Program-made: the position numbers and the translations under genes
Shown: piece by piece, positions 1,295 to 28,611 of the stretch
Numbering within the stretch: position 1 is the first letter of the stretch
Layout of the letters: each line of letters starts with the position of its first letter
NCBI GenBank assembly: GCA_002269645.1
Contig: NIVC01003677.1
Location: forward strand, 50,374-83,339
DNA length: 32,966 nucleotides
Reading direction: 5' to 3'
Source of the DNA: Macrostomum lignano
Taxonomy: Eukaryota
The notes under the pieces: generated by a model
What the model was told of the DNA's origin: nothing
Database searches by the model: none
What the model saw: only the letters and a program-made list of their open reading frames with translations

Positions 1295-1565
1295 AGTCAC
1301 CAACCTAACCATCACTGTTCGTAAAATTAACGCCCTTGAGGGCCAACCCACGAAGCACGTTGAGGTGTACACTCCGAACGTTGAATAGCTCGTAAAATTA
1401 GGGTCCTGTGAATGTGTTTTTCCAGTGCGTATGACTGCGTACGTATCCGCGCGTTTGTGTGCCTGCTCAGGGGAGTCGGTGGAATGGGCAGCAATGCCTC
1501 TCGCTGGTTGTTTGAATGACGCTCAAAGTGCACACAGCCCCCTGCCTCTAACTGAAAGCTAAGCA
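1295..1565 (+). mobile_element. tRNA-derived SINE family A, degraded or 5'-eroded copy
   Basis: Body matches 26590-26860 and, inverted, 12131-12360 (e.g. gtgtgcctgctcaggggagtcggtggaatgggcagcaatgcctctcgctg and cagccccctgcctcta). The tRNA head is not clearly recognisable here; boundaries approximate. Confidence 0.75.
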
Positions 1566-2516: not shown

Positions 2517-3201
2517 ATGGCCGACGCGTCTCGCCTACCGGTTCTTCTCTGTGCTCTCCTCACCTGCGTGGCAGGCAGATTCGTTTAATTCTCCTACGTG
2601 GGCTGCTATGTTGATAACACTGGCAGTGTTCGAGACATGAAAGGCATTGGTAGCCTCGAAAATGTCGCTTGAGATCTGCAGTGGCATCTGCGCTCAGAGC
2701 AGCTTCCCGTATTTTGTTGTGCAGTTTTCCACGGAGTGCTACTGCGACAGCTCCTTCGGGTTGCAAGGAAAGGGAAAAGAGAGCGACTGCAACAGGCCGT
2801 GCAGGGGAAACTGGAGTCAAATCTGCGGAGATGCAGATCGCAACTCGGTGTATGCTCTGAGCTACCCTGGTCAGTAACTGAGTGTCTTATTCTTCATTTG
2901 CAATAAATCAACCAAGACATGCCATGAAACAACTGGCACATCGGGACTCTTCAATTCAGTTTCAGACTGGAACAGCTACACGGTGGTGAAGCCAAGCAAC
3001 CTGACGGTCACATTCAAGAGAACCCGCTACTCGCTTGTCGCTGCCCAGTCTGACGCGGACTGCCTGCTCCAGTGCAGCGCCAGAGCCGACTGCCAGGCCG
3101 CCGTTTTCTCCAAGCGGCTGCTCGCCTGCCGCCTGCTGGACTTTGTCTACCCGCCAGCCAGCCTGACCGGACCCGACTGGACTCTCTTCGTGCGGGGCTG
3201 A
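2517..3201 (+). pseudogene. Disabled secreted WSC + PAN/apple-like gene (exon 1 2517-2869, intron 2870-2965, exon 2 2966-3201)
   Basis: Paralog of 9534-10228 with the same GT-AG intron. In-frame TAA at 2586-2588 (CAC in copy 2) and a net 8-nt deletion causing a frameshift between 2643 and 2661. Exon 2 is still open (VKPSNLTV...WTLFVRG*). Confidence 0.85.
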
Positions 3202-3455: not shown

Positions 3456-4704
3456 GTCAGTCAGTCAGTCAGTCAGTCAGTCAGTCAGTCAGTCAGTCAG
3501 TCAGTCAGTCAGTCAGTCAGTCAGTCAGTCAGTCAGTCAGTCAGTCAGTCAGTCAGTCAGTCAGTCAGTCAGTCAGTCAGTCAGTCAGTCAGTCAGTCAG
3601 TCAGTCAGTCAGTCAGTCAGTCAGTCAGTCAGTCAGTCAGTCAGTCAGTCAGTCAGTCAGTCAGTCAGTCAGTCAGTCAGTCAGTCAGTCAGTCAGTCAG
3701 TCAGTCAGTCACCCACTCACTCAAGTCAGTCAGTCAGTCAGTCACCCACTCACTCAAGTCAGTCAGTCAGTCAGTCAGTCAGTCAGTCACCCACTCACTC
3801 AAGTCAGTCAGTCAGTCAGTCAGTCAGTCAGTCAGTCAGTCAGTCAGTCACCCACTCACTCAAGTCAGTCAGTCAGTCAGTCAGTCAGTCAGTCAGTCAG
3901 TCACCCACTCACTCAAGTCAGTCAGTCAGTCAGTCAGTCAGTCAGTCAGTCAGTCAGTCAGTCAGTCAGTCAGTCAGTCAGTCAGTCAGTCAGTCAGTCA
4001 GTCAGTCAGTCAGTCAATCAGTCACCCACTCACTCAAGTCAGTCAGTCAGTCAGTCACCCACTCACTCAAGTCAGTCAGTCAGTCAGTCAGTCAGTCAGT
4101 CACCACTCACTCAAGTCAGTCAGTCAGTCAGTCAGTCAGTCAGTCAGTCAGTCAGTCAGTCACCCACTCACTCAAGTCAGTCAGTCAGTCAGTCACCCAC
4201 TCACTCAAGTCAGTCAGTCAGTCAGTCAGTCAGTCAGTCAGTCAGTCAGTCAGTCAGTCAGTCAGTCAGTCAGTCAGTCAGTCAGTCAGTCAGTCAGTCA
4301 GTCAGTCACCCACTCACTCAAGTCAGTCAGTCAGTCAGTCAGTCAGTCAGTCAGTCAGTCAGTCAGTCAGTCAGTCAGTCAGTCAGTCAGTCAGTCAGTC
4401 AGTCAGTCAGTCAGTCAGTCAGTCAGTCAGTCAGTCAGTCAGTCAGTCAGTCAGTCACCCACTCACTCAAGTCAGTCAGTCAGTCAGTCAGTCAGTCAGT
4501 CAGTCAGTCAGTCAGTCAGTCAGTCAGTCAGTCAGTCAGTCAGTCAGTCAGTCAGTCAGTCAGTCAGTCAGTCAGTCAGTCATTCAGTCAGTCACAGTCA
4601 GTCAGTCAGTCAGTCAGTCAGTCAGTCAGTCAGTCAGTCAGTCAGTCAGTCAGTCAGTCAGTCAGTCAGTCAGTCAGTCAGTCAGTCAGTCAGTCAGTCA
4701 GTCA
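3456..4704. repeat. (CAGT)n tetranucleotide array, ~1.25 kb, with recurrent CCCACTCACTCAAG interruptions
   Basis: Read directly; about a dozen copies of the interrupting variant at irregular spacing. Confidence 0.98.
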
Positions 4705-9470: not shown

Positions 9471-9533
9471 CCCTTTCGCTTATTTGCGTCTCATAGCGCA
9501 TCTCGGCTTCCAGTTTTGGCGTCCCTAGTAGTC

Positions 9534-10228
9534 ATGGCCGACACGCCTTGCCTACCGGTTTTTCTCTGTGCCCTGCTCGCCTGCGTGGCCGGCAGGTTCG
9601 TTCACTTCTCCTACGTGGGCTGCTATGTTGACTATATTGACGGAACGCGAGATATGAAAGGTAATAATTTGAATAGCCCCGATGAAATGTCGCTTGAGAT
9701 CTGCAGCGCCATCTGCTCTCTGGACAGCTTTCTGTATTTCGGTGTGCAGTTTTCTTCTCAGTGCTTCTGCGACAGCTCCTTCGGGTCGCAGGGAAAGGGA
9801 GAAGAGAGCGAATGCAACAGGCCGTGCAGTGGAAACTCGAGTCAAATCTGCGGAGGTGGAGGTCGCAACGCGGTTTATGCTCTGAGCTACCCTGGTCAGT
9901 AACTGAGTTGTTTTATATTTCATCTGCAATGAGCATCCAAGACAAGCCATAAATCAGCTGCGATTCATTGAGACTTGAAAATTCAGTTTCAGACTGGAAC
10001 AGCTACACGGTGGTGAAGCCAAGCAACCTGACGGTCACATTCAAGAGAACCCGCTATAATCTTGTCGCTGCCCAGTCTGACGCGGACTGCCTGCTCCAGT
10101 GCAGCGCCAGAGCCGACTGCCAGGCCGCCGTTTTCTCCAAGCGGCTGCTCGCCTGCCGCCTGCTGGACTTTGTCTACCCGCCAGCCAGTCTGACTGGACC
10201 CGACTGGACTCTCTTCGTGCGTGGCTGA
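9534..10228 (+). CDS. Secreted WSC-domain + PAN/apple-like protein, 198 aa (exon 1 9534-9894, phase-1 intron 9895-9992, exon 2 9993-10228)
   Basis: Signal-peptide-like MADTPCLPVFLCALLACVAG. WSC signature YVGCYVD...MSLEICSAIC...YFGVQFSSQCFC...ECNRPCSGNSSQICGG...NAVY. Donor G|GTCAGT and acceptor tttcag join the exons in frame (YP-DWNS). Exon 2 has CLLQCSARADCQAAVF...CRL, a PAN/apple-like Cys pattern. Confidence 0.88.
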
Positions 10229-10495: not shown

Positions 10496-10832
10496 AGTCA
10501 GTCAGTCAGTCAGTCAGTCAGTCAGTCAGCTAGTCAGTCAGTCAGTCAGTCAGTCAGTCAGTCAGTCAGTCAGTCAGTCAGTCAGTCAGTCAGTCAGTCA
10601 GTCAGTCAGTCAGTCAGTCAGTCAGTCAGTCAGTCAGTCAGTCAGTCAGTCAGTCACCCACTCACTCAAGTCAGTCAGTCAGTCAGTCAGTCAGTCAGTC
10701 AGTCAGTCAGTCAGTCAGTCAGTCAGTCAGTCAGTCAGTCAGTCAGTCAGTCAGTCAGTCAGTCAGTCAGTCAGTCAGTCAGTCAGTCAGTCAGTCAGTC
10801 AGTCAGTCAGTCAGTCAGTCAGTCAGTCAGTC
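10496..10832. repeat. (CAGT)n array, ~335 bp
   Basis: Read directly; same position relative to the gene as 3456-4704; one CCCACTCACTCAAG interruption. Confidence 0.98.
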
Positions 10833-11511
10833 TGTTTGGGCTGGTTGCCTTCATAATAACTGATTCCGACAAATGGATACGAAATGGTAAAAAAATGTAG
10901 AAAAATATGGGCACGTGACTTGACTGACTAGCAAGCTGTCAAAAAAATTTCATCATGAGTTAGCAACGATGTATTGACACTGCAAGCAGTAGGATTTGCT
11001 TCAAGCTAGCAGAGATAAATGGAGCCATAAGTCGAGAGTGTGTGAAAAGGAAGTTGACGAAGTAAATGGTGATGCATAAAATTGTCGTCAATTAGCACTC
11101 CCATCGTTGCTAGAAGCTGACGTTGATGAAGAACTGATCCATCAATCATTTTTGGATTTCCTTTCTTCCAGCAAAAAGCTAGAAAGCCTGTATTTCCAAT
11201 TTTTTTGACAGGAAAATCTCCATTTTATCGCTTTCGTGCTTCTCCATGCATTTCCTTGATGCATTGAGGAGTGCCAGGCGCTTGTATGCATGGATACTAA
11301 CACGAATGCTTTTTATTGGAGGTGTCTGTTTTCAGATAATGGGATGTAGAATTTTTTTCTAGAAGGTGCTTAAATAGTAACTTTGTGTTTGATAGGGAAG
11401 ATTTGACAGACTAGAGGAAAATACAAGCTATGGCCATTAATTTCATTCTTCAGATCCAGAGAAAATGTGTTAGAAAGTTCTTGCGGTTCTAAGGTAATGT
11501 GTACGGTTCCA

Positions 11512-11587
11512 GGACATTTCGTCAACAGGCATTTCGTCAACTGGTATTTTGTCAACCTGCATTACGGCAACCGGACATTTGGTTCAA
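11512..11587. repeat. Five degenerate 15-bp tandem units (CATTTCGTCAAC core)
   Basis: GGACATTTCGTCAAC / AGGCATTTCGTCAAC / TGGTATTTTGTCAAC / CTGCATTACGGCAAC / CGGACATTTGGTTCAA. Confidence 0.8.
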
Positions 11588-12429
11588 GCCAAAATTATTC
11601 ATGTTAGCCGTTAACGTTATCATATTCTTGTGATTCAATGTACTGGCCCGTACTGTAGCTCTCTCTCTCTCTCTCTAGATCTGCCAACCCTCCCTACCCC
11701 TTCCATGCTCGCAACTTATTGTTAACTATTTTTATAATGTACTTTACACTGTTTTGTGGTGCCACTGCACTGGACCTAGTTGATGAATTAATTTATTTAT
11801 TTACTCACCCAGTGTCTGCGATTTCGGACCCCTGATTATGGTTAGCCCTCTCTCCCGCGCCCTCTCATTGGCTGTCACTATCATCTGTTAACTCTTGTTT
11901 TCTACCCCAATTTGCGTTCTGCGTGGCTGCAGCCAATCCCCTCTGGCTCTGTCTGCCCCACCCTGCCGTTTCTCTTACCCTGCAGCTATAACCCCACCCC
12001 ATTTGGAGCTGTCTTTTATTTATTGGCGTGTCTCCCGCGTGAGTTGTTTCCCCCTTTCCGTTTCGCTTCTGCTCGCTACCCTCTCAACTCCTGCTATTCC
12101 AAGCCCAATATAGCGCCCAATATATTTTTATTAGAGGCAGGGGGGTTGTGTGCACCCTGGCGCACTTTAAGCGACATAGGCACACAACCGGCGAGAGGCA
12201 TTACTGCCCATTCCGCCGACTCCCCTGAGCAGGCACACAAGCACGCGGATACGTACGCAGGCACACACTCACACAGGAGTGTACAGCGGCCCTAAATTTA
12301 TATTATCGTTAGGCATGTACACTTCACTGCGCCTTGGGGGGTTGGCTCTCAAGGCCATTAATTGCACGAGACTACGTATCGCGCCAAATCTGCCGGGTTT
12401 TCAGAATTCTGACGCAAAAAACGCAAATT

Positions 12430-12800
12430 ATACTACTATCTGAAAATGAAGTAAGTAGTATACAAAAACGCTATCCTAAGCGTGATATGGCAATATGTAG
12501 TCGTAATAATCCATGTGCTCATATATGTACATTAATTCCATGTACATTAATCCCTAAATATCTCAAATTGGATATGTACATTATTCCCATGTACATTAAT
12601 CCATATCTCAAATGTCCATGTCTATCCCCACTGAAAATGAAGTAAGTAGTATACAAAAACGCTATCCTAAGCGTGATATGGCAATATTTAGTCGTAATAA
12701 TCCATGTGTTCATATTAATTCCATGTACATTAATCCCTAAGTATCTCAAATTGGATATGTATTAATTCCATGTACATTAATCCCTAACTCAAATTGTCCA
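12430..12800. repeat. Subterminal repeats: ~190-bp duplication plus many CATGTACATTAAT motifs (mirrored at ~19675-20045)
   Basis: ctgaaaatgaagtaagtagtatacaaaaacgctatcctaagcgtgatatggcaata at ~12440 and ~12632; repeated atgtacattaatcc. Confidence 0.85.
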
Positions 12801-13946
12801 TGTCTATCCCCAATTCTATATGTACATGTGCATTAATCTACAGTGTCATCCCCAGCGCGCGCGCACCAAAATTACAACTCGAAACCCTACTACATGTACA
12901 ATCTCATCCAAATGAGTCAACTAATTGTATAGCTCACATCGTAATGTATATTTCCAATGTACATTCTCAGAGACAGATTTGAATAATACTGGTCGGAGCC
13001 TATATGTACATCGATAGCCTATACTCATATCTGCTACATACCCAAAAAATTAGGTATAATGTACATTTTCACCCTCGGAGAATGTAGGTTTGAATATGCT
13101 GATAATTTATTCGAAATCACTTATAAAATACACATACTTTCATATAGAGGCGGGCCTGTACAAATTCTCGCCAAGCAATGGGGTGGAGGTTGCGTCATTC
13201 AAGTCTCTCCCAAGTCTGCCCCCAAATACAAGACTGTGTTGAAGCAGTGCTTTATATTTCTATTGACAGTGGGTATGATACAAGAAGCATCGTCGCGCTT
13301 TAATTACAGTAAACCATCCCTTCGAAGCTCCTATACTGAATGCTGAATCACCCTTTAACTCGGACCATAGTCAAATTCAACCCTGTTCGAAAACAGCCAC
13401 CCCTCCGATGTTCACCAGACTCGTCTTCACAGCGCAGACCCCATAGCAAAATCGAGCTAAATTTTAACACTCGCCCTGTTCTCTCTGTCCCCCTTCTAAA
13501 TGCCAAGGAATTTCGACCCTCTCTCCATTTTCAGTGTACAGACAGATCTTTCCACAGCACAGACCCTATATTAAACTTCATTCAGCAAAACCCCTCTCTT
13601 CTCCGATTACGTCATCCATGCCGCCCCAGATAGCAAGAAACCAACTTTTAATGCACACATCAACCCCGCGAATCTGAGCAAATCATGAGTCCGCCAACCT
13701 CTACCTGCATTGACAAACCCCAGCTGCATTTGTAAATGTACACAGCCTATGAATCAGTGTCTCCACCGCATGCAATTCTGATTTACTTGATCTAAACTTT
13801 GTAAATAGTATAAGTCACCCTTGCGTTTACTAGAAGTAGTGAAGTCCACAAATTTAAATACGTGAGGCTATTCAATTCTGCCTCTCCCCTGCCTTCTCAC
13901 TTCAAGCTTTCAGACTTGGTCTTTGAGACGGTTTAATCTGTTAGAA

Positions 13947-15184
13947 GCAGGAATGAATCATGCACTGACCTCTCCATACAAAGTAAAGTTGGAATTTCAA
14001 ACAAGAAATTTGGTTATTTTGAAAGCTAAATGACTAGAAATGCACATTTTTTCATAAGAAAATACAATTTTTCACAGTTTTTATGCATTTTTTACGTTAA
14101 AATGCAGACTTTATTGATCAAAATCAGTAGTTTCATCACTAGAAACCATACTTTCAACAGCTAATTTGTCCAAATGTCGCTTTCAACTTGACCTTAGACA
14201 GCTTTTAAGCAGGAATGAATTCCACACAAACATCCACAAGCCAGCCCAAAATCATCCAAAGACATGGCTATTGAAGCCTAAATTGCTAGAAATGCGCATT
14301 TTTTTCATAAGAAAATACAAATTTTCACAGTTTTTATGCATTTTTTACGTTAAAATGCAGACTTTATTGATCAAAATCAGTAGTTTCATCACTAGAAACC
14401 ATACTTTCAACAACTAATTTGTCCAAATGTCGCTTTCAACTTGACCTTAGACAGCTTTGAAGCAGGAATGAACCCCCACGAACATCCACAAGCCACCCCA
14501 GAATCAACCAAAGACATGGCTATTGAAGCCTAAATTGCTAGAAATGAGCATTTTTTCATAAGAAAATACAAATTTTCACAGTTTTTACGCATTTTTTACG
14601 TTAAAATGCAGACTTTATTGATCAAAATCAGTAGTTTCATCACTAAAAACCACAATTTTAACACAAAATTATCACAAATGCTACTTCTGGAACTCTGAGA
14701 CAGCTTTGAGCAGGAATTATAATCGCACACGGATTACCCGAGCCAGTCCAATTTCCACTAAAGCCATCGTTTTTTTTAAAGCTAATTCTTAGAATTTCTC
14801 ATTCTTTCGTTTAATAAAGGCCAATTTTCACAGTTTTATTATTTTCTAACGTTAAAATGCGAAATGCGAATTGATCAAACTTAGTAGTTTCATCCCAAAA
14901 GCCATAATTTCAACCGCTAATTTGTCCAAATGCTGATTTCAAAGTTGGCAAGAGACAGCTTTCGAGCAGGAATGAGTCACACACTGATCTCCATATGCAC
15001 ACCCCGGCCCAAGTTGGAATTCCACCCAAGACATTTTCATTGAAAGCTAAATTACTAGAAATTTGCGCATTTTTGTTTAAAGCATGTCAATTTTTCACAG
15101 TTTTTACTCTTTTTAACGTTAAAATGCTGACTTTATTGAACAAAATTAATCACTTCATCAGCAGAAACCATAATTTTTACAACT
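13947..15184. repeat. About five tandem ~250-bp AT-rich units within the arm (mirrored at 17288-18525)
   Basis: Units start GCAGGAAT at 13947, 14209, 14462, 14710 and 14966; shared cores ttttcacagttttt, acgttaaaatgc, tagtttcatc. Confidence 0.9.
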
Positions 15185-15332
15185 AACACTCCTATTTTAC
15201 ATTCATTAAGAGGCGGCGGGCGCAGGCGGAGGCGGCAGTAGAGACAGGGACTGTGCTGCGCACAGTCACGGTCCGGCCACCCTCCGCCCGCTGCTGCCGC
15301 CTCTTAATGAATGTAAAATAGGAGTGTTAGTT
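15181..15332. mobile_element. 152-bp MITE-like hairpin with perfect 37-bp inverted ends
   Basis: 15181-15217 is the exact reverse complement of 15296-15332; GC-rich interior with an inner stem gactgtg/cacagtc. No convincing TSD. Confidence 0.7.
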
Positions 15333-15939
15333 CATGTATTAATGCTCCTTGACCTGCAAAATTTATACGGTTGCTAGGCAGTGTCGTAACACAGGACAAA
15401 TTTACAAAATGTCTCTATGAAAACTCATCTTCCTACTGACAGTAGAGTTTGCAAATATAGCAGTTGACAGATTTTTATTGAGAAACTATCGTCATTTCCA
15501 CAGAGAAAGATAAACATGTGAAGCTTTCGTGAAGATTACATCTTCATACTATGGGTGTCAAATTTTCCTGTATTTGACTGAACGTACGTGCATTTAGTCA
15601 TAGTCGGGGGAGTACTTCAACCATTTCTCAGGTTTAAATCGGCTGCCGCTTGCATATGTACATCACATGTAAATGAACATGTGGTAAATCTGATGAGGAA
15701 CTATGCACACATGCGCGAGTTGCCCCGGAAAGAGCTGAGATTGATAGATAATGAAAAATCAGTAGGAAAGAGAGAATGAGGCTGCGTGACCACCCACCCC
15801 ATTATCCTGTCTTTCCGTTGCATGGCAGCACGTAATTAAATGTGTCAAGTGTACAATTGATTCAATCGATTACTCGTTTATACGCAAAGTATCGAGAGAG
15901 TTTTTAATTGCATCCAAACTTTCTGACTAATGCCTTCGT

Positions 15940-17080
15940 GTGTTCCAAAGAAGGAGACACTGATTCATAGGGTGTGTACATTGACAAATGCAATTACAGC
16001 ACACATGGTAGGGTTGGCTTTGGTAGACGCGCGGATTTGCTTGGTTCGCATTGTTCATATATGTGCATCGAAATTTTTTTCTTGCTAACTGCTTCTATGG
16101 GGATGTATAGATGATGACGTAATCAGAGATAGGGCTTTGGTTGGGGGAGGCTGGGTCCGTGCTGTGAAAATATCTGCTTGCTTCGTCAAAATGTACATTG
16201 GGATTGAGAGAGAGGCCGGTCGAATTTCGTTGACAACTAGAAATGGAAAGGTTTGGTCAGAGAATAGGGGTGTATGTGTGTTTTGGCTTTATTCAAAATG
16301 GGTCTGTGCTGCGAAGACGAGTCCATTGACCATTGGGTGTTTGCTGTTTTGCCAATTCAGTATACTGAACCTGTTAAACTGATTGCCTCATGAGTCACTT
16401 TTCTGGGGTATGTGTAGGAGAGAGAGGCCTGAGAGAGACAAGGGCTCGATTTGGGTGGGTCCTCTGGCTCCATTCGTATTGGCTAATTTGGCGAATTGGC
16501 AAATCTACTTGCATGGGTTAAATTATTGAATATGGTCAGAGTTGAAGAATTTGGGGGATGAATCAAGATGTAAAGTTGGCAAAAACAACACTGATTCACC
16601 ACATCTAAAAGATGACTGCTAGGAGCTTCGGAAATAAGACTACTGTACACAGCAGCATCAACAAAAGGTATTAAATTGTCAATCAAAATCGACCCGTAGA
16701 TGTGCGATTTTGCATGGTTCACAATGTTCATATGTGCATCGAAAAATTTTGTTTCTTGCTAACTGCTCCTATGGGGAGGTGGATGACGTAATCAAGATAG
16801 GGTTTTGGTTGGAGGAGGCTCAATATATGAGTCTGTGCTGTGAAAATATCTGTTTATAAACTGAAATTCGAGAGGGAGGGTCGGAATTCCTTGACAGTTA
16901 GAAATGGTAAGGTCAGAGAGACAGGGACGAGTGGTTCTGTTCTACATGGGTCTGTGCTGTGAAGACGAGTCTAATATGACCATTGGGTGTTGGGTGTTTT
17001 GCCAATTCAGTAATACACTAAACCTGTCCAGCTGATTGCCACATGAGTCACTTTTCTCGGTGGGTGCAGAAGGAGAGAGA
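15940..17080. repeat. Two diverged copies (~15940-16420 and ~16700-17080) of a module also found in the arms (18700-19100 and 13370-13770)
   Basis: Shared ggagacactgattcatagg, gatgacgtaatc, tctgtgctgtgaaaatatctg, gaagacgagtc, cattgggtgt and atgagtcacttttct. Confidence 0.75.
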
Positions 17081-17287
17081 GAGGTCTGGGAGGGACAGTT
17101 TAAATGTCAATCGAAATCAACGGGCCGCTTCGCCGACTGTATATGTTAAAATTATTATAGCTAGGTTTATAGCAAACTGTACGTTTTAACCCAATATTCA
17201 AGAATAATCCCTTCCCTGACTTCATGAGGGGTATTACACGTACCAAATACATACATTTGAATGATGAAACAGCATTTTTGACGATTA

Positions 17288-20103
17288 AGTTGTAAAAATT
17301 ATGGTTTCTGCTGATGAAGTGATTAATTTTGTTCAATAAAGTCAGCATTTTAACGTTAAAAAGAGTAAAAACTGTGAAAAATTGACATGCTTTAAACAAA
17401 AATGCGCAAATTTCTAGTAATTTAGCTTTCAATGAAAATGTCTTGGGTGGAATTCCAACTTGGGCCGGGGTGTGCATATGGAGATCAGTGTGTGACTCAT
17501 TCCTGCTCGAAAGCTGTCTCTTGCCAACTTTGAAATCAGCATTTGGACAAATTAGCGGTTGAAATTATGGCTTTTGGGATGAAACTACTAAGTTTGATCA
17601 ATTCGCATTTCGCATTTTAACGTTAGAAAATAATAAAACTGTGAAAATTGGCCTTTATTAAACGAAAGAATGAGAAATTCTAAGAATTAGCTTTAAAAAA
17701 AACGATGGCTTTAGTGGAAATTGGACTGGCTCGGGTAATCCGTGTGCGATTATAATTCCTGCTCAAAGCTGTCTCAGAGTTCCAGAAGTAGCATTTGTGA
17801 TAATTTTGTGTTAAAATTGTGGTTTTTAGTGATGAAACTACTGATTTTGATCAATAAAGTCTGCATTTTAACGTAAAAAATGCGTAAAAACTGTGAAAAT
17901 TTGTATTTTCTTATGAAAAAATGCTCATTTCTAGCAATTTAGGCTTCAATAGCCATGTCTTTGGTTGATTCTGGGGTGGCTTGTGGATGTTCGTGGGGGT
18001 TCATTCCTGCTTCAAAGCTGTCTAAGGTCAAGTTGAAAGCGACATTTGGACAAATTAGTTGTTGAAAGTATGGTTTCTAGTGATGAAACTACTGATTTTG
18101 ATCAATAAAGTCTGCATTTTAACGTAAAAAATGCATAAAAACTGTGAAAATTTGTATTTTCTTATGAAAAAAATGCGCATTTCTAGCAATTTAGGCTTCA
18201 ATAGCCATGTCTTTGGATGATTTTGGGCTGGCTTGTGGATGTTTGTGTGGAATTCATTCCTGCTTAAAAGCTGTCTAAGGTCAAGTTGAAAGCGACATTT
18301 GGACAAATTAGCTGTTGAAAGTATGGTTTCTAGTGATGAAACTACTGATTTTGATCAATAAAGTCTGCATTTTAACGTAAAAAATGCATAAAAACTGTGA
18401 AAAATTGTATTTTCTTATGAAAAAATGTGCATTTCTAGTCATTTAGCTTTCAAAATAACCAAATTTCTTGTTTGAAATTCCAACTTTACTTTGTATGGAG
18501 AGGTCAGTGCATGATTCATTCCTGCTTCTAACAGATTAAACCGTCTCAAAGACCAAGTCTGAAAGCTTGAAGTGAGAAGGCAGGGGAGAGGCAGAATTGA
18601 ATAGCCTCACGTATTTAAATTTGTGGACTTCACTACTTCTAGTAAACGCAAGGGTGACTTATACTATTTACAAAGTTTAGATCAAGTAAATCAGAATTGC
18701 ATGCGGTGGAGACACTGATTCATAGGCTGTGTACATTTACAAATGCAGCTGGGGTTTGTCAATGCAGGTAGAGGTTGGCGGACTCATGATTTGCTCAGAT
18801 TCGCGGGGTTGATGTGTGCATTAAAAGTTGGTTTCTTGCTATCTGGGGCGGCATGGATGACGTAATCGGAGAAGAGAGGGGTTTTGCTGAATGAAGTTTA
18901 ATATAGGGTCTGTGCTGTGGAAAGATCTGTCTGTACACTGAAAATGGAGAGAGGGTCGAAATTCCTTGGCATTTAGAAGGGGGACAGAGAGAACAGGGCG
19001 AGTGTTAAAATTTAGCTCGATTTTGCTATGGGGTCTGCGCTGTGAAGACGAGTCTGGTGAACATCGGAGGGGTGGCTGTTTTCGAACAGGGTTGAATTTG
19101 ACTATGGTCCGAGTTAAAGGGTGATTCAGCATTCAGTATAGGAGCTTCGAAGGGATGGTTTACTGTAATTAAAGCGCGACGATGCTTCTTGTATCATACC
19201 CACTGTCAATAGAAATATAAAGCACTGCTTCAACACAGTCTTGTATTTGGGGGGCAGACTTGGGAGAGACTTGAATGACGCAACCTCCACCCCATTGCTT
19301 GGCGAGAATTTGTACAGGCCCGCCTCTATATGAAAGTATGTGTATTTTATAAGTGATTTCGAATAAATTATCAGCATATTCAAACCTACATTCTCCGAGG
19401 GTGAAAATGTACATTATACCTAATTTTTTGGGTATGTAGCAGATATGAGTATAGGCTATCGATGTACATATAGGCTCCGACCAGTATTATTCAAATCTGT
19501 CTCTGAGAATGTACATTGGAAATATACATTACGATGTGAGCTATACAATTAGTTGACTCATTTGGATGAGATTGTACATGTAGTAGGGTTTCGAGTTGTA
19601 ATTTTGGTGCGCGCGCGCTGGGGATGACACTGTAGATTAATGCACATGTACATATAGAATTGGGGATAGACATGGACAATTTGAGTTAGGGATTAATGTA
19701 CATGGAATTAATACATATCCAATTTGAGATACTTAGGGATTAATGTACATGGAATTAATATGAACACATGGATTATTACGACTAAATATTGCCATATCAC
19801 GCTTAGGATAGCGTTTTTGTATACTACTTACTTCATTTTCAGTGGGGATAGACATGGACATTTGAGATATGGATTAATGTACATGGGAATAATGTACATA
19901 TCCAATTTGAGATATTTAGGGATTAATGTACATGGAATTAATGTACATATATGAGCACATGGATTATTACGACTACATATTGCCATATCACGCTTAGGAT
20001 AGCGTTTTTGTATACTACTTACTTCATTTTCAGATAGTAGTATAATTTGCGTTTTTTTGCGTCAGAATTCTGAAAACCCGGCAGATTTGGCGCGATACGT
20101 AGT
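17288..20103 (-). repeat. Right arm of the long inverted repeat (2816 bp)
   Basis: Reverse complement of 12371-15184; the 250-bp unit continues a little further (to ~17200) on this side. Confidence 0.95.
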
Positions 20104-21289
20104 CACGAGCAGAGCCAAGCCGAGATTCCAATTCAGCCCCAAATTAATGTGACTGCACTTGGAATCGAGCCTGGGTCGCTGGCACACCAGAGCAGCTGCG
20201 CTGGGCTACGGCCCCCTCTAGCGCCTAATATAAAACGTACTTACTACCGGAACGTCCAGAGCGCCCGATTGCCGAAACTGCGCAAATGTAAGTGTCACCT
20301 GTACTTATTTCTTTTGGGATTCAGTGCTTAGGATCTTGTCACCAGGGCCTAGGTGCGTTCGCTGCGACCCTTGTTGCCGGCCTACTGCCTGCGCGTTAGT
20401 CCGACAGCGGGTTGGCAAGCAGCAGGACTGAGTGCTGAGTCTTCCTGCTCGTATAGAGCGCGAGAAGACGAAGCCGGCTGGTCCTTCTCGGGACACAATA
20501 TTTAAGTTTAAGTTTTAAGTTTAATCATCGTTATCTACGTTACACAGATGTCCAGATCCTATAAAACTGCATACCAGTATCGATGCTTGCAAATTTCCGA
20601 GAACAAAAGCGACTAGTCAGTACCCAAAAAGTATGGTTAATTAAAACTCCAAGATTTTTATAATTGATCGGGAAACTCTATTTTCAACTAGACAACAAAT
20701 CTCTTCAAAAAATTTCTAATCTTATAAAAGATGATAAACTGTTTTAAATTTTTTTATATTATCTCTTTATAAACTGTTTTTAGGCTTGTGTTAAATTTGC
20801 GCTTACTTTGCAAGCTTTGGTAAGGCTGGAAGTGGGTGAAAATATTGTTGTGGAATTGTGCCCTTTTTCGCCCCCGTGCCCCGCTCCAACCCTTCCCTCC
20901 TATAGCGTACATTTGTTCTTTAAGTATTTAATATTCATGTACTCGCGGGTCTAATGGCAAATATATATTGAAGCTGCTGTCTAGTGGGCAGCCGCCGCCT
21001 TGCTTCTTTTTGGTCCTATCGTTGGCGACTTCAAAAAAACTTACTTGTCTACCATAGCAAGTGCACGGCGAACTGCATCGGCTTTTCGTGAGCTAGTGAG
21101 TTACTGTTCTTTTCCTGCTTCTCCTAGGGCGCGGGACGGGAGATCCTACTTAGAACCTAAGTTCGAACCTAGGATCGCAGCTTCCCAACTGGTTAGGCTG
21201 CAGGCGTCGCTCCGGAGGACAGGCTCACAACCACAAAAATTTAAACATAAATTTTTGTAATATAAATACTCGTAAAAGACAAGCTAACA

Positions 21290-21510
21290 CACGTGAAGGG
21301 AGTCCAGCCAGGTTCGGTCAGGCTCGCTGGCGGGTAGGCGAACGCCAGCAGGTGGCAGGCAAGGCAGCCGATTGGAGAAAACGGCGGCCTGGCAGTCGGC
21401 TCTGGCACTTCAACGGAGCAGGCAGTCGGACTGGGCAGCGGCCGGCCAGACAGAAGTCGAGTTGGAAGTCACCATTGGGCTGGACTTGGGTGATCTGTCT
21501 GAATCTTTGG
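21290..21510 (-). pseudogene. Inverted, diverged PAN/apple-like exon pseudogene
   Basis: Minus strand: acceptor tttctttcag at 21511-21520, then AAQSDCLLR*SARADCQAAVFSNRL, a +1 frameshift, then ACHLLAFAYPPASLTEPGWTPF. Clear homolog of WSC-PAN exon 2 with a Cys-to-stop change. Confidence 0.8.
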
Positions 21511-23812: not shown

Positions 23813-24880
23813 CAACTCGACGATTTCTGCATAGCTGCCCGGGACTACGAGGTCTGCCTGCAGCTGCACAATTTTCTGCTGGTCACCCTGCAGCGCCTCG
23901 GCTTTGAGATCAACTGGGCCAAGACGCAGAGCCCAGCCACTTCGGTCACTTTCCTGGGTGTGCAGATCGACACATTGACTGGCCTGCTGTCACTGCCCGC
24001 CGAGAAGATGGACGGCCTTCGAGAACTTCTCCAGGACTGCGCCAACTCGAAGAGCCTGCAAAAACGTCGCCTTCAGCACCTAGTCGGCAAACTGAACTGG
24101 TTCTGCAAAGTGGCCAAACCTGCAAAGGCCCTGCTTCGCGCGCTCCTGGAGATAACCATCGCTATTCCTGAGCAGCATCATCGAGTACCGGTGCGCGGCG
24201 AGCTACTGGCCCAGTTGCAGTTCTGGCAGCATGCAATCCCAGTGTTCCCGACCGACAAGCTGTGGCGGCGTGCACGAGTGCTGGCAGCGGTCGAGACGGA
24301 CGCCTGCGTCAGTTCCGGTGGCATGATCCTGAGCACCTCTGATGGCCAGCGCGAGTTCCGCCTCGTCGACTTCTGCAGTGACGCCGGTGGATCTTCATGA
24401 GCGAGCACATCAACGCCAAGGAGATGGTACTGCCGCTGCTCGCCATCATTCTGTTCCAGGAGCAGCTGGCCGGCGGCAAGGTGGCCTGCTAAGTCGACAG
24501 CAGCGCGGCGGTCGGCACCATCAACCGCGGTGCCTCCAGCAACCCGATCGTCATGACCCTGCTCAAAACGGCCACTCTGGCAGCGCTGAGGCACGACTTT
24601 CAGTTTCGAGCTCACCATATGCCGGGGTCCTGGCAGCTGCTGAGCGACCCACTGTCGCGCTGCCTGACGCATCCCCGCCACATGCTGCTGTTTCTGCTGC
24701 GCTACTTCGGCCGGGCCAAGGCGCAGCCGGAAGATCTGCGCAGGGCCTGCCTCAATGAGTCAACGGCGGCCCGGTTGCTTGAGCAGGCGTCGCTCGCGCT
24801 GAGCCCCGGTCTCTGGCGCGGTTCTCGAGCGGAGCGAGTTGCGACGGCTGAAGCAGATCCCGAGCTCAGGTACGAGTCTT
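23813..24880 (+). mobile_element. Decayed DIRS/Ngaro-type tyrosine-recombinase retrotransposon: C-terminal RT + RNase H + start of the recombinase N-terminal region
   Basis: LDDF at 23816-23827, LQRLGFEINWAK, VTFLGVQID, LQHLVGKLNW; RNase H motifs ETDAC, HINAKE, VDSSAAV, SDPLSR. Frameshift near 24389 and stop at 24490-24492. 5'-truncated at the RT catalytic motif; recombinase catalytic domain absent. Confidence 0.88.
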
Positions 24881-24987
24881 AGAGCTATTGCTTGGACCTG
24901 GCTTTTTTAGCTTGGTTTAATTTTTTCTGCGGCTCGTTGATTTGATTTTACACGCTTGTCTCCTTCCTCCCTCTTTCTGTTGGTGTT

Positions 24988-25393: not shown

Positions 25394-26510
25394 GGAGAAT
25401 GATTTTAAATTAGTAATAAATTTTGTTTTAAACATCTAACAGACCTGAAACTGTTGAAAGTTCGTGCAATACTGAAAATTTAAATGTGGGAATAATTACT
25501 CAGAGGAATCAATCAGCCTATGTTTGTTCGAATTTATTTGCTAATATTTTTATTGTAGGTTCGCACTTACTAGTTGCTGGGCTTTCGGTCTCAAATGTGT
25601 CAGGAAAATCAGCCATCGATACTGAGTTCGATCGTTTCTTCGAATACCAGATAAGGTTTGGTTATATAAGAATTTTTTGTGTAATTAATCTGAAAAGGGG
25701 AAATTTGGATTTTTGGATGGAAAGTTAATATATACAATAAAGCTATTTTGTAATGTAAAACTAATTCTAAGCTAGCTAAGCTAGTAACTGTGTATATATA
25801 CTTCTATACTACTATATGCACTCGTACTCCTATACACTTGTAGATACACCTATATATTAACTAGCTAAGTTATACTAAACGTTGGTCAAAATAAAAAAGC
25901 AGACATTCGGTGACAAGCGGAAAACTCTTAGTTTCCTTTGATTTATTTGAATTGAGTTGTTGTACTTGATTAGATAATCGTTCATATTTAAATAAACAAT
26001 TGAATTAGGAATCAGCAATTTACGAGCCTGTTAGTTTTATGTTTACTATAAATAAATGAATCAGAGTAAGAGAAAAATATAATTCAGTGATGCACTACAA
26101 TCGAGGGCCAGTCGCAGTTTGCGATTTTGATACATTCAAATTCAAAAGATCGATTACATTAAATACAACTATAACATTTACTCGTACTCCAATGTTAGAA
26201 GTATTTCTTTAACTTCTTTCAATAAAACATTAAAAATCAGGAAAACTTTGTATTCATTTATAATGAGTTTTAATAATGAAAACATACACTAGGATAACGT
26301 TTTTCTCAATCAAAAATTCGGCAACGGTTAGTTATAGCGAGAGCAATTCTGCTGCTGTTTTTAACTTAGACTGGCTTAAACTGTTTAGAACAGTCACTGT
26401 ATATCGTCTTTCATTAAACAATAAAAACTAAATTTGTTCCATCGAGGCACTAATGAAAACACGCTCCTTTTGTAATAATTATGTTATTATACTACGTAGT
26501 AATTTATTAC

Positions 26511-26860
26511 GGGGGCCGTAGCCTTGTGGTCTAACGCGGCGTTCTGATGTGCCAGCGGCCCATACTCGATTCCAAGTGCAGTCAGCTTGGCTCTGCTCAT
26601 GCAAGTAACGGCCTTAAGGGCCAACCTCAAGACACAGTAAAGTGTACATGCCTAGCGATAAAAATTGTTAAAGCCACTGTACACCCCTGTGTGCGTGTGT
26701 GCCTTTACGAATGACTGTATACATATCCGCGCGCTTGCTTGTGTGCCTGCTTAGGGGAGCCGGCGGAATGGGCAGTAATGCCTCTCGCTGATTGTGTGAC
26801 AATGTCGCTTAAAGTGCACCAGGGTAAACAGCCCCCTGCCTCTAACCAAGAAGCTAACTA
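26511..26860 (+). mobile_element. tRNA-derived SINE family A, near-complete uninterrupted copy
   Basis: GGGGGCCGTAGCCTTGTGG (A-box-like)...ACTCGATTCCAAGTGCAGTCA (B-box-like); body shared with the copies at ~1300 and 12131-12370. Confidence 0.85.
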
Positions 26861-27148: not shown

Positions 27149-28611
27149 TTACAACCGCATTTTTTGAAGAAGTTCCGTCACCTGAACCCTGCAGTCATTC
27201 GTTGTTTGGTTCCTAGCTGAATTGGCTTGTTGGCGCGATTCACGACTGCTTTGAGGAGGCTCATTGACTCGAATCCAAAATTTCTTGCTTGTCTGCACAG
27301 ACCACCAGGGCAGCTGGCTGATGCCCAGATTAAAAGTGGCGTTTTGCACCACATAATTAACGATAGGAACCATTGATGCAATGTCGCACTTGTCGGCGAA
27401 CAGGTCGAGAACAGTGCACAGACACTGGATGAACCGACTGCCTCTGTCTGTCATTCGGTAGCTGCTTTCATCCGGCGAAGTCGAGTGAGCGACGATCATG
27501 TCAGGAAAGAACGCCAGCTCTGATTTAGGCCATCGACCAGGGTCTCGACAGTTCTCAAAGATAACCAATTGCTGCTTTCTACTTGTGCGTTTTCCTTTGG
27601 AAATTCTCTTTAGAATTTTACTTTCCTTTGCTGATTCGCCGTCGAAACCAACTACTTCACCGAGACATCCGTGAGACATAAAAGCAACTACGACTGAGCT
27701 GCCGTGTCGTGCGTCACTGCAAAACATGTCTAATTCGCTTTCGATTTCTACTTTGGTGAGATTCGACCTGATGCTCACTGAGTAGCCAAGCCTGAGCAAA
27801 GTGTCAGCCATTCGCTGGCAGTCGTACTGACTTCCGAACCGAGTAGATAGTTCCTTTTTCTGAAAGACAACGTTGTGAACGATGAGGGCTACAGCCTTGC
27901 ACTCTTGAGTGTCTAATCCAGGTGCATTCCATTCGCTTCTGAAAGTCTCTAATCGGAGAGAACCTCTTATTGCTGGTCTCGTCTGCGTGTCGTCACTAAC
28001 GTCAATTGAAGTCAGATTTGGGTGCGATGAACTCTCTTCTATATAAAAGTTTTCAAGCCAAGTGATTCTCTTCCTCCAGCCTGGGTTTTCATCATTGACT
28101 TTGCAGTGCATTATGCCGTGATGGCAGGAATGGCAGGAAAAATCTCTACCAACCACAAAGCTGCCATTGAGAGAGATGTTCTTCCTGGGAGATTCCAGCA
28201 GGGAGTCCAGAAATTCAATCACGCCGCACCGATTCCTGCAAACTCTGACAACGCTGAACTTCTCGGGTAGCTCCTCTGGCATCTGAGTGTTCGCGAAATT
28301 CTCTTCAGACTCGGACACTTCGCAAAGAATAAGCAAAATGCTACTGCTGCACTTTTGAGACGATTGCTGTTTAGAAAGTTCATCGAATATTTCTTGCAAG
28401 ACGTTGTCGTTGCGATGCGTGCGTACAATTAGATAAAGGACAACATTTCCTTCAGTTTCTTTTGGAAGCCTGATGGCTGTCTTGATTGAGCTCGAATTGC
28501 CATCCGTGTAATCGAAGAGCACTTTGAAGGCTGCATACTCCAGAAACATCTGATAGTTTCTGGCCCCATCAAACTGTCCTTCGGTGAGAATCATCACAAA
28601 CCCTGTTCGAT
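27149..28611 (-). CDS. Exon 4: degenerate caspase fold + caspase (peptidase C14A-like) domain with intact His/Cys
   Basis: AVALIVHN...TRFGSQYDCQRMADTLLRLGYSV...VVVAFMSHG (His 27673-27671)...LVIFENCR (Cys 27550-27548)...DMIVAHST...SYRMTDRGSRFIQCLCTVL...QLP. Confidence 0.93.

What the first reader, a model, noticed from the sequence alone, without database searches (positions are those of the whole stretch)
12365..20109. 7.7-kb foldback element with 2.8-kb arms and a 6-bp (or 4-bp) TSD that fits no standard terminal signature
Seen: CACGAG flanks both ends and the termini are ACTACGTATCGCG...CGCGATACGTAGT. Because the TSD starts with C and ends with G, it can also be read as GACTAC...GTAGTC with a 4-bp ACGA TSD. 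Arms are almost identical and nothing inside is coding. Established: long TIRs with 6-bp TSDs typify Polintons/Mavericks, but those usually start 5'-AG; CACTA, Transib, Mutator, P/Galileo and piggyBac have other termini or TSDs. Inference: a young non-autonomous member of an unusual or unclassified family whose autonomous partner lies elsewhere.
Basis: partly seen in the sequence, partly recalled or inferred. Interest (0 to 1): 0.72.

Follow-up and report, generated by a model that had tools for sequence, protein, structure and literature searches.

The report
Non-coding foldback transposon in flatworm DNA
A 7.7-kb piece of mobile DNA with two identical 2.8-kb inverted arms and no genes has inserted into an older repeat in the genome of the flatworm Macrostomum lignano. 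It is a real insertion of a familiar structural kind (a foldback-type, non-autonomous DNA transposon), but its family could not be determined from this single copy.

Summary
Inverted arms 12371-15184 and 17288-20103 (2814/2816 bp) differ only by two one-base homopolymer lengths. CACGAG lies directly outside both tips. The flanks belong to one ~330-bp interspersed repeat. Its uninterrupted copies (window 26510-26845, minus strand; M. lignano contig NIVC01000896.1) carry CA[C/T]GAG once. This is therefore a true insertion with a target-site duplication of 6 bp (4-6 bp by register), not an assembly fold-back.

The element has no coding capacity. The longest open stretch is 119 codons. All six frames gave no Pfam match, and one full frame found no homologue among 5.8 billion protein clusters.

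Each arm carries a 191-bp x2 array holding seven copies of a 16-bp motif, a 1.2-kb unique stretch, and about 4.6 units of a 253-bp repeat. This layout matches the foldback elements Tetris, Galileo and FB.

The host is Macrostomum lignano. No second copy could be found because no tool reaches this genome's DNA. Superfamily, TSD register, copy number and autonomous partner stay open. The tested signatures of Polinton, IS3EU, Dada, Mutator/FB and P/Galileo are not met.

Verdict: an ordinary, well-preserved non-autonomous foldback element. "Unclassified family" is untested, not shown.

The parts
12365..12370 (.). Left copy of the target-site duplication (CACGAG; ACGA in the 4-bp register)
   Evidence: The hexamer is present once in uninterrupted copies of the host repeat.
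12371..15184 (+). Left arm (long terminal inverted repeat), 2814 bp, C-rich on the + strand
   Evidence: GC skew about -0.2.
12371..12439 (+). Unique terminal domain of the arm, starting ACTACGTATCGCGCC
12440..12812 (+). Subterminal tandem array, 191 bp x 2 (about 90% alike). It holds most copies of the 16-bp motif CCATGTACATTAATCC: 7 copies at 12523-12839, 4 exact and 3 with three mismatches, all in the same orientation relative to the tip. Candidate transposase-binding sites (inference). Mirror image at 19661-20033.
   Evidence: 14 matches in the window, all inside the arms, against 0.15 expected.
12813..14012 (+). Unique inner part of the arm. It includes a segment (about 13392-13764) that has diverged copies in the middle domain.
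14013..15186 (+). Inner tandem array of about 253-bp units, roughly 4.6 units at 75-94% identity, reaching the inner end of the arm. Mirror image at 17284-18459.
15185..17287 (.). Middle domain, 2103 bp, non-coding and asymmetric
15181..15332 (.). 152-bp near-perfect hairpin (52-nt stems, GC-rich centre) abutting the left arm
   Evidence: I22. DNA fold -68.7 kcal/mol, z = -15.
15953..17097 (+). Two diverged direct units (16023-16440 and 16696-17097, 75% alike). They resemble arm segment 18708-19082 at 65-72% identity, in right-arm orientation. These are older internal duplications.
   Evidence: GC skew +0.32 at 16-17 kb.
17288..20103 (-). Right arm, 2816 bp, reverse complement of the left arm
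20104..20109 (.). Right copy of the target-site duplication (CACGAG)
12125..12370 (.). Left part of the interrupted host repeat 'R' (an older interspersed repeat of about 330 bp)
20110..20230 (.). Right part of the interrupted host repeat 'R'. It carries an extra stretch of about 29 bp that the other copies lack.
26510..26845 (-). Uninterrupted copy of repeat 'R', used as a paralogous empty site. It is not part of the element.

Best explanation
This is one copy of a non-autonomous class II (TIR) DNA transposon of the foldback type in the genome of Macrostomum lignano or a very close relative.

Inferred mechanism: a transposase or integrase encoded elsewhere in the genome recognised the two identical ends. 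The seven subterminal 16-bp motifs per arm may have served as extra binding sites. The enzyme joined the ends to staggered cuts 6 bp apart (4-6 bp depending on register) in a partly palindromic target, TTG-CACGAG-CAG, inside an older interspersed repeat. Gap repair then produced the flanking CACGAG duplication.

Shown: the insertion, the duplication, the absence of coding capacity and the arm architecture.

Inferred: trans-mobilisation, the binding role of the motifs and the type of enzyme.

The 2.8-kb arms most likely grew by inverted duplication or recruitment of internal sequence, and by expansion of tandem repeats inside the TIRs, as documented for Galileo and Tetris. They are kept identical either by recent origin or by arm-to-arm conversion. 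The superfamily is undetermined.
For: - Inverted arms of 2814/2816 bp with zero substitutions.
- CACGAG on both sides. The hexamer is single in two uninterrupted copies of the host repeat, which are colinear with the joined flanks at 88-89% identity.
- No ORF longer than 119 codons stop-to-stop. No Pfam hit for the ten longest open stretches, nor for all six frames of 12371-17287 with X at stops.
- No homologue for frame 2 of 12372-17287 among 5.8 billion protein clusters.
- A 16-bp motif occurs 7 times per arm, only in the arms and in a fixed orientation relative to the tip; 14 observed against 0.15 expected.
- The domain layout (terminal domain, tandem repeats inside the TIRs, non-coding middle) matches published foldback elements. 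Tetris has TIRs up to 1735 bp with about 220-bp tandem repeats and a non-coding middle domain (PMC4079207). Galileo has TIRs up to 1.25 kb with about 210-bp internal tandem repeats, TIR growth by recruitment of internal sequence, and its longest TIRs in non-autonomous copies (PMC3573991).
- Host identified through the neighbouring caspase ORF, 90-100% identical to M. lignano proteins, and through a paralogous M. lignano contig.
Against: - Only one copy was seen. No second copy of the tips or arms exists in the window, in 42 kb of other M. lignano DNA, or as an exact 24-mer in the metagenome, viral and prokaryotic collections. Those collections do not hold this genome, so this is absence of access, not absence of copies.
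- No autonomous partner or transposase is known.
- A TSD of 4-6 bp with tips ACTACG/GACTAC matches no superfamily signature that could be checked.
- The only arm differences are homopolymer lengths, which are typical long-read consensus errors. The sequence quality inside the arms is therefore not independent evidence of anything.
Confidence: 0.8

Rival explanations
1. An ordinary short-TIR transposon inserted here, and the 2.8-kb arms arose afterwards at this locus. One end region would have been copied over the other by intra-element inverted duplication or conversion. The foldback shape would then be a feature of this copy, not of its family.
For: - Zero substitutions between the arms, while internal duplicates of the same arm segment have diverged to 65-75% identity. 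The arm identity is therefore much younger than the rest of the element's internal history.
- In Galileo, TIR extension by recruitment of internal sequence is documented, and the longest TIRs occur in non-autonomous copies (PMC3573991).
Against: - The identity runs exactly to both tips and the TSD is intact.
- The subterminal motif arrays and tandem arrays are mirror images, as in family-wide foldback architectures.
- No other copy is available to tell the two cases apart.
Confidence: 0.12
2. A non-autonomous derivative of a Polinton/Maverick element. It would be mobilised by that element's retroviral-type integrase, which makes 6-bp duplications.
For: - A 6-bp duplication is one of the allowed readings. 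Polintons characteristically make 6-bp TSDs (PMC10045372).
- The element has long TIRs.
Against: - The tips are ACTACG/GACTAC, not the 5'-AG that established knowledge (Kapitonov and Jurka 2006) gives for Polintons.
- No trace of a polymerase, integrase, protease, ATPase or capsid domain in any frame at Pfam E <= 0.1.
- 7.7 kb of tandem-repeat-rich non-coding DNA is the foldback pattern, not an internally deleted Polinton.
- The TSD may be 4 or 5 bp.
Confidence: 0.04
3. An assembly artefact: a fold-back chimera from long reads with a missed adapter, or a collapsed or mis-joined repeat.
For: - The arms differ only by homopolymer lengths, the signature of long-read consensus error rather than of biological divergence.
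- The M. lignano assemblies derive from early PacBio data and are known to be difficult, with 36% of the assembly length in chimeric scaffolds (PMC5730564, PMC10733133).
Against: - A read chimera gives a spacer-less palindrome. Here 2.1 kb of asymmetric unique sequence separates the arms.
- Both outer junctions run into the two halves of a single older repeat, with a clean 6-bp duplication of the target. An artefact would not create that.
Confidence: 0.03
4. Two independent insertions of the same 2.8-kb element, head to head, forming a composite.
For: Two identical units lie in inverted orientation.
Against: - The terminal 15- to 27-mer occurs only at the two outer tips, so the inner ends of the arms lack termini.
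- There is a single matching TSD pair at the outer ends only.
- The inner ends fall inside a 253-bp tandem array.
Confidence: 0.01

Closest known systems
Tetris, a foldback transposon of Drosophila virilis (PMC4079207)
   Same: - Long TIRs built of an outer flanking domain, an array of about 220-bp tandem repeats and an inner domain.
- A variable middle domain with no coding capacity.
- All copies non-autonomous, and the autonomous partner never found.
   Different: - Tetris TIRs reach 1.7 kb; here they are 2.8 kb.
- Tetris TSDs are 8-10 bp, which led its authors to suggest Mutator; here the TSD is 4-6 bp.
- No sequence relationship was tested or is expected (insect versus flatworm).
Galileo, P superfamily, Drosophila (PMC3573991, PMC3688188)
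   Same: - Foldback-like long TIRs with internal tandem repeats of about 210 bp.
- The repeats carry extra transposase-binding sites.
- TIRs grow by repeat expansion and by recruiting internal sequence.
- The longest TIRs occur in non-autonomous copies.
   Different: - Galileo makes 7-bp TSDs and has known transposase-bearing copies.
- Its TIRs are at most about 1.25 kb.
- The binding role of the 16-bp motif here is inference only.
FB (Foldback) of Drosophila melanogaster and Tm1 of root-knot nematodes, Mutator/Foldback group (PMC3169594; FB from established knowledge)
   Same: Arms made largely of tandem repeats, mostly non-coding copies, and a TSD at the ends.
   Different: Their TSDs are about 9 bp; here the TSD is at most 6 bp.
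IS3EU/GingerRoot and Polinton/Maverick, the superfamilies with 6-bp TSDs (PMC10045372)
   Same: A 6-bp duplication, if that register is the right one.
   Different: - IS3EU/GingerRoot tips are TA..TA (occasionally TG..CA). Polinton tips are 5'-AG. Here the tips are ACTACG...CGTAGT.
- No coding remnant links the element to either superfamily.

Membership tests
Foldback-type non-autonomous TIR element (a structural class, not a superfamily) | Very long terminal inverted repeats that make up most of the element | tested here: met
   2 x 2.8 kb out of 7733 bp.
Foldback-type non-autonomous TIR element (a structural class, not a superfamily) | Tandem repeats inside the TIRs | tested here: met
   191 bp x 2 and about 253 bp x 4.6 in each arm.
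Foldback-type non-autonomous TIR element (a structural class, not a superfamily) | Non-coding middle domain | tested here: met
Foldback-type non-autonomous TIR element (a structural class, not a superfamily) | Target-site duplication and a demonstrable empty site | tested here: met
   CACGAG on both sides; the hexamer is single in uninterrupted paralogous repeat copies.
Foldback-type non-autonomous TIR element (a structural class, not a superfamily) | Several dispersed copies sharing the termini | not testable with these tools
   No tool searches the Macrostomum genome as DNA. None found in the window plus 42 kb of other loci.
Polinton/Maverick | 6-bp TSD | tested here: inconclusive
   The duplication can be read as 6, 5 or 4 bp from one copy.
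Polinton/Maverick | 5'-AG terminal signature (established knowledge, Kapitonov and Jurka 2006) | tested here: not met
   The tips are ACTACG or GACTAC.
Polinton/Maverick | Protein-primed polymerase B, rve-type integrase and capsid/ATPase/protease genes, or recognisable remnants of them | tested here: not met
   No Pfam family at E <= 0.1 in any of six frames.
IS3EU/GingerRoot | TA..TA (occasionally TG..CA) termini with a 6-bp TSD (PMC10045372) | tested here: not met
   The tips are AC...GT or GA...TC.
Dada | No TIRs; insertion at a fixed site inside tRNA or snRNA genes; 6-7 bp TSD (PMC3706591) | tested here: not met
   The TIRs are 2.8 kb. The target repeat gives no tRNA or Rfam match even at E <= 1.
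Mutator/Foldback (FB, Tetris, Tm1) | TSD of 8-10 bp | tested here: not met
   The direct repeat cannot be extended beyond 6 bp.
P superfamily (Galileo) | TSD of 7-8 bp | tested here: not met
   The maximum is 6 bp.
Kolobok / piggyBac | TTAA TSD | tested here: not met
   The TSD is CACGAG or ACGA. Family feature from PMC9587614 and PMC10045372.
Sola2 | 4-bp AT-rich TSD (AWWT) (PMC3627910) | tested here: inconclusive
   The 4-bp register gives ACGA, which is not AWWT. One copy cannot define a preference.
Ginger1 / Ginger2 | 4 or 4-5 bp TSD (PMC10045372) with TGT..ACA tips (established knowledge) | tested here: not met
   The tips are not TGT..ACA. The TSD length is compatible.
Any DDE superfamily | Homology of the transposase of an autonomous relative | not testable with these tools
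   This copy encodes nothing. Repeat-derived proteins of this worm are absent from the protein database, because the GenBank annotation excluded repeat-overlapping transcripts (PMC5730564).

The most novel reading that the evidence does not exclude
The element represents a DNA-transposon lineage not yet described. Its signature would be ACTACGTA tips, a 6-bp partly palindromic target duplication, and kilobase-long TIRs with arrays of a 16-bp motif. Its autonomous partner in Macrostomum would encode a transposase or integrase outside the current superfamilies, or a deeply divergent branch of a 6-bp family (IS3EU/GingerRoot/Polinton-type integrases).
Probability: 0.1. Interest if true: 0.55.

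Novelty: new member of a known kind. Interest (0 to 1): 0.25.

Why it matters
For genome annotation, this is a clean, datable example of a recently intact foldback element in a flatworm. The worm's DNA transposons are essentially undescribed, and unclassified repeats were filtered out of its published repeat library (PMC5730564).

Perfect 2.8-kb inverted repeats are hot spots for hairpin or cruciform formation, deletion, inversion and mis-assembly. They can also yield long double-stranded RNA if transcribed, so copies near genes deserve attention; here there is a caspase gene pair 7 kb away.

If other copies fix the TSD at 6 bp and lead to a transposase-bearing relative, the family could extend the short list of eukaryotic transposons that make 6-bp duplications. 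On present evidence it is an ordinary repeat, and of interest mainly to people annotating Macrostomum genomes.

Tried and rejected
1. Other copies, searched as DNA:
- The 27-mer and 15-mer tips with up to 3 mismatches, and the whole element by blastn, against the window and two other M. lignano loci (L001, L002; 42 kb) gave nothing.
- The exact 24-mer tip in metagenome, viral and prokaryotic contig collections gave nothing. This was expected, because those collections do not hold the host genome.

2. Other copies, searched through proteins:
- Exact look-up of three ORFs of the element (97, 125 and 95 aa) found none on record.
- A full single-frame translation of 12372-17287, with X at stops, found no hit in 5.8 billion clusters.

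3. Sampling more M. lignano DNA through a multicopy repeat protein: the 146-aa ORF in the GC-rich block at 23960-24400 had no homologue, so this route closed. P0004 (UniRef only) is not on record.

4. The homeologous empty site: the 21-kb locus around the paralogous caspase (L001) matches window 25.4-31.4 kb only and does not reach the insertion site. It did, however, supply a second uninterrupted copy of the host repeat.

5. Dada-like targeting of small-RNA genes: my first impression that the host repeat has a tRNA-like head was not supported. ARAGORN and Rfam found nothing, even at E <= 1. Idea dropped.

6. KolobokP composite elements: these have direct, not inverted, long terminal repeats and TTAA TSDs (PMC9587614). 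Not relevant.

7. The reading in which CACGAG belongs to the element (CACTA-like imperfect tips): rejected, because the uninterrupted host repeat already contains the hexamer.

8. The representative-protein scan was not run. It searches the same protein universe that lacks this worm's repeat-derived ORFs, and it returns no genomic context.
Full report

Yes. The repeat finder and a blastn self-comparison show that 12371-15184 and 17288-20103 are reverse complements of each other. A global alignment of the two arms (2814 and 2816 bp) finds only two differences, both one-base differences in homopolymer length: A6 versus A7 at 12416|20058 and C5 versus C6 at 13219|19254. There are no substitutions.

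The tips read ACTACGTATCGCG... and ...CGCGATACGTAGT, and CACGAG lies directly outside each tip (12365-12370 and 20104-20109). The 27-nt tip occurs nowhere else in the window, even with three mismatches, against 0.00 expected.

Because the hexamer starts with C and ends with G, the same letters can be read as GACTAC...GTAGTC with a 4-bp ACGA duplication, or as two asymmetric 5-bp versions. One copy cannot choose between them.

**2. Is it an insertion?**

Yes, and this is the main thing the tools added. The DNA on the two sides of the element (12125-12370 and 20110-20230) forms the two halves of one older interspersed repeat of about 330 bp, which I call R.

An uninterrupted copy of R lies at window 26510-26845 on the minus strand. 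Another lies in a paralogous Macrostomum lignano contig (L001 = NIVC01000896.1, positions 11265-11600 of the locus). When the two flanks are joined with a single CACGAG, they align colinearly with both uninterrupted copies at 88-89% identity over about 347 columns. Those copies read ...TTGCA[C/T]GAG followed at once by CAGAGCCAAGC, with the hexamer present once.

So the hexamer belongs to the target, and it was duplicated when 7733 bp were inserted. This also disposes of three other ideas:
- that CACGAG is part of the element;
- that the structure is two independent insertions (the inner arm ends have no termini);
- that the structure is a read-chimera palindrome, which would have no 2.1-kb asymmetric spacer and could not recreate a split repeat with a target duplication.

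**3. Host and surroundings**

The window is eukaryotic. It holds a (GTCA)n array of 310 units and has no tRNA or Rfam hits.

The 509-aa caspase-domain ORF at 27149-28678 (Pfam PF00656) hits only Macrostomum lignano proteins, at 90-100% identity. The surrounding 6 kb are about 90% identical to M. lignano contig NIVC01000896.1. The host is therefore M. lignano or a very close relative.

The published subgenomes of this worm differ by only about 2% (PMC10733133). L001, at about 90% identity, is therefore an older paralogue, not the homeologue, and it does not extend to the insertion site.

**4. Anatomy**

Each arm has, from the tip inwards:
- a unique terminal domain of about 70 bp;
- a 191-bp x 2 tandem array (12440-12812; mirror 19661-20033);
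- about 1.2 kb of unique sequence;
- an array of about 4.6 units of a 253-bp repeat that runs to the inner end of the arm (14013-15186; mirror 17284-18459).

The subterminal region carries seven copies per arm of the 16-bp motif CCATGTACATTAATCC (four exact, three with three mismatches). They lie 150-470 bp from the tip, always in the same orientation relative to it, and nowhere else in the window (14 found, 0.15 expected).

The 2103-bp middle domain (15185-17287) has three features:
- It starts with a 152-bp near-perfect hairpin (15181-15332; DNA fold -68.7 kcal/mol, z = -15).
- It contains two diverged direct units (16023-16440 and 16696-17097, 75% alike). They resemble arm segment 18708-19082 at 65-72% identity, in right-arm orientation. 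This also explains the G-rich skew of 16-17 kb.
- These old internal duplicates (65-75% identity) contrast with the 100% identity of the arms. The arm identity is therefore much younger than the element's internal history, either because the arms were formed recently or because they are being homogenised.

**5. Coding capacity**

There is none.
- The longest stop-to-stop stretch in one arm plus the middle is 119 codons.
- The ten longest stretches give no Pfam match above noise.
- All six frames of 12371-17287, with X marking each stop, give no Pfam family at E <= 0.1. There is therefore no detectable remnant of a DDE transposase, rve integrase, polymerase B or capsid protein.
- One complete frame, searched against 5.8 billion protein clusters, found nothing.

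**6. How it most likely works**

The insertion and duplication are shown. The rest is inference from established transposon biology.

An enzyme encoded elsewhere recognised the two identical ends, made staggered cuts 4-6 bp apart in the target, and joined the ends. Repair of the gaps produced the duplication.

The target TTG-CACGAG-CAG is two-thirds palindromic (8 of 12 positions), as expected for a symmetric transpososome, but this is a single instance.

By analogy with Galileo, the repeated 16-bp motifs are the obvious candidates for secondary transposase-binding sites. In Galileo, tandem repeats inside the long TIRs carry extra binding sites for the transposase THAP domain (PMC3688188, PMC3573991). 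The long arms probably grew by expansion of repeats within the TIR and by recruitment or inverted duplication of internal sequence, both documented in Galileo (PMC3573991).

**7. Comparison with what is known**

Structurally this is a textbook foldback element.
- Tetris of Drosophila virilis has the same plan: an outer flanking domain, an array of about 220-bp tandem repeats, an inner domain, a non-coding middle, only non-autonomous copies, and a partner that was never found (PMC4079207).
- Galileo and FB are similar. [quoted passage not shown]

Membership in a superfamily therefore rests on TSD length, tip signature and, above all, the transposase. Against the signatures I could document:

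| Family | Documented signature | Result here |
|---|---|---|
| Mutator/FB/Tetris | 8-10 bp TSD | Excluded; the repeat cannot exceed 6 bp |
| P/Galileo | 7-8 bp TSD | Excluded; the repeat cannot exceed 6 bp |
| Kolobok, piggyBac | TTAA TSD | Excluded |
| Dada | No TIRs; targets small-RNA genes (PMC3706591) | TIRs are 2.8 kb; the target repeat has no tRNA or Rfam similarity even at E <= 1 |
| IS3EU/GingerRoot | 6-bp TSD, TA..TA tips (PMC10045372) | Tips do not match |
| Polinton | 6-bp TSD (PMC10045372), 5'-AG tips (established knowledge), viral-type genes | Tips do not match; no gene remnants |
| Sola2 | 4-bp TSD, AT-rich, AWWT (PMC3627910) | The 4-bp register gives ACGA |
| Ginger | 4-5 bp TSD, TGT..ACA tips (established knowledge) | Tips do not match |

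Tip signatures vary within superfamilies, however, and one copy with an ambiguous TSD register is thin ground for calling a family unclassified.

**8. What could not be done**

No tool here searches the Macrostomum genome as DNA.
- The metagenome, viral and prokaryotic collections contain no exact match to the 24-nt tip.
- The protein route failed because the GenBank annotation of Mlig_3_7 excluded transcripts that overlap repeats (PMC5730564). Repeat-derived ORFs of this worm are therefore absent from the protein database.

Copy number, the true TSD length, target preference, the autonomous partner and support from raw reads all remain open.

**9. Verdict**

A real, structurally intact, non-coding foldback-type DNA transposon copy in Macrostomum lignano, inserted into an older repeat with a 6-bp (4-6 bp) target duplication. 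It is a new member of a known structural kind, and its superfamily is unknown.

"Young" is plausible but not proven by arm identity. The two arm differences look like long-read homopolymer errors. The Polinton idea has no support.

Interest is modest (0.25). I give a 10% chance that a genome-wide census would reveal an undescribed transposase lineage behind it.

Noticed in passing
window 27149-28678 (-) and 29420-30880 (-): Two neighbouring intronless ORFs (509 and 486 aa), each with a caspase (Peptidase_C14) domain in its C-terminal half. A block about 90% identical, with further caspase genes, lies on M. lignano contig NIVC01000896.1. This is a locally expanded caspase family.
   Followed up: partly
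window 3456-4704 and 10496-10832: A very long (GTCA)n microsatellite of 310 units, and a second array of the same tetranucleotide (written AGTC, 84 units) on the same strand 5.8 kb away.
   Followed up: no
window 26491-26500 (also in L001 near 11620): The 10-bp palindrome ACTACGTAGT lies next to the uninterrupted copy of repeat R. It equals the first five plus the last five bases of the foldback element and is the only other ACTACGTA in the window (0.5 such 8-mers expected by chance). It could be chance or a footprint-like relic. No flanking duplication was seen.
   Followed up: partly
window 12125-12370 + 20110-20230; 26510-26845 (-); 1429-1531 (-); L001 11265-11600: An interspersed repeat of about 330 bp ('R'), with at least three full or partial copies in the window at 80-89% identity. 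My impression of a tRNA-like end was not supported by ARAGORN or Rfam. The interrupted copy has an extra stretch of about 29 bp that the others lack.
   Followed up: partly
window 23960-24882: A GC-rich block (60% GC at 24-25 kb) with overlapping ORFs of 109-167 aa on both strands. No Pfam match and no homologue in the protein database. It looks like a decayed repeat or retroelement fragment, but nothing confirms that.
   Followed up: partly
window 9516-9902 (+): An ORF with a clear WSC domain (PF01822, E = 4.5e-19), probably an exon of a host gene.
   Followed up: no
window 15181-15332: A 152-bp near-perfect hairpin with a GC-rich centre, at the junction of the left arm and the middle domain (DNA fold z = -15). 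It may be a small palindromic insertion of its own. No other copy in the window or the fetched loci.
   Followed up: partly
window 21295-21427; 3058-3189 (-); 10085-10216 (-): Another short interspersed repeat of about 133 bp, three copies at 86-87% identity, seen while comparing the right flank with the rest of the window.
   Followed up: no
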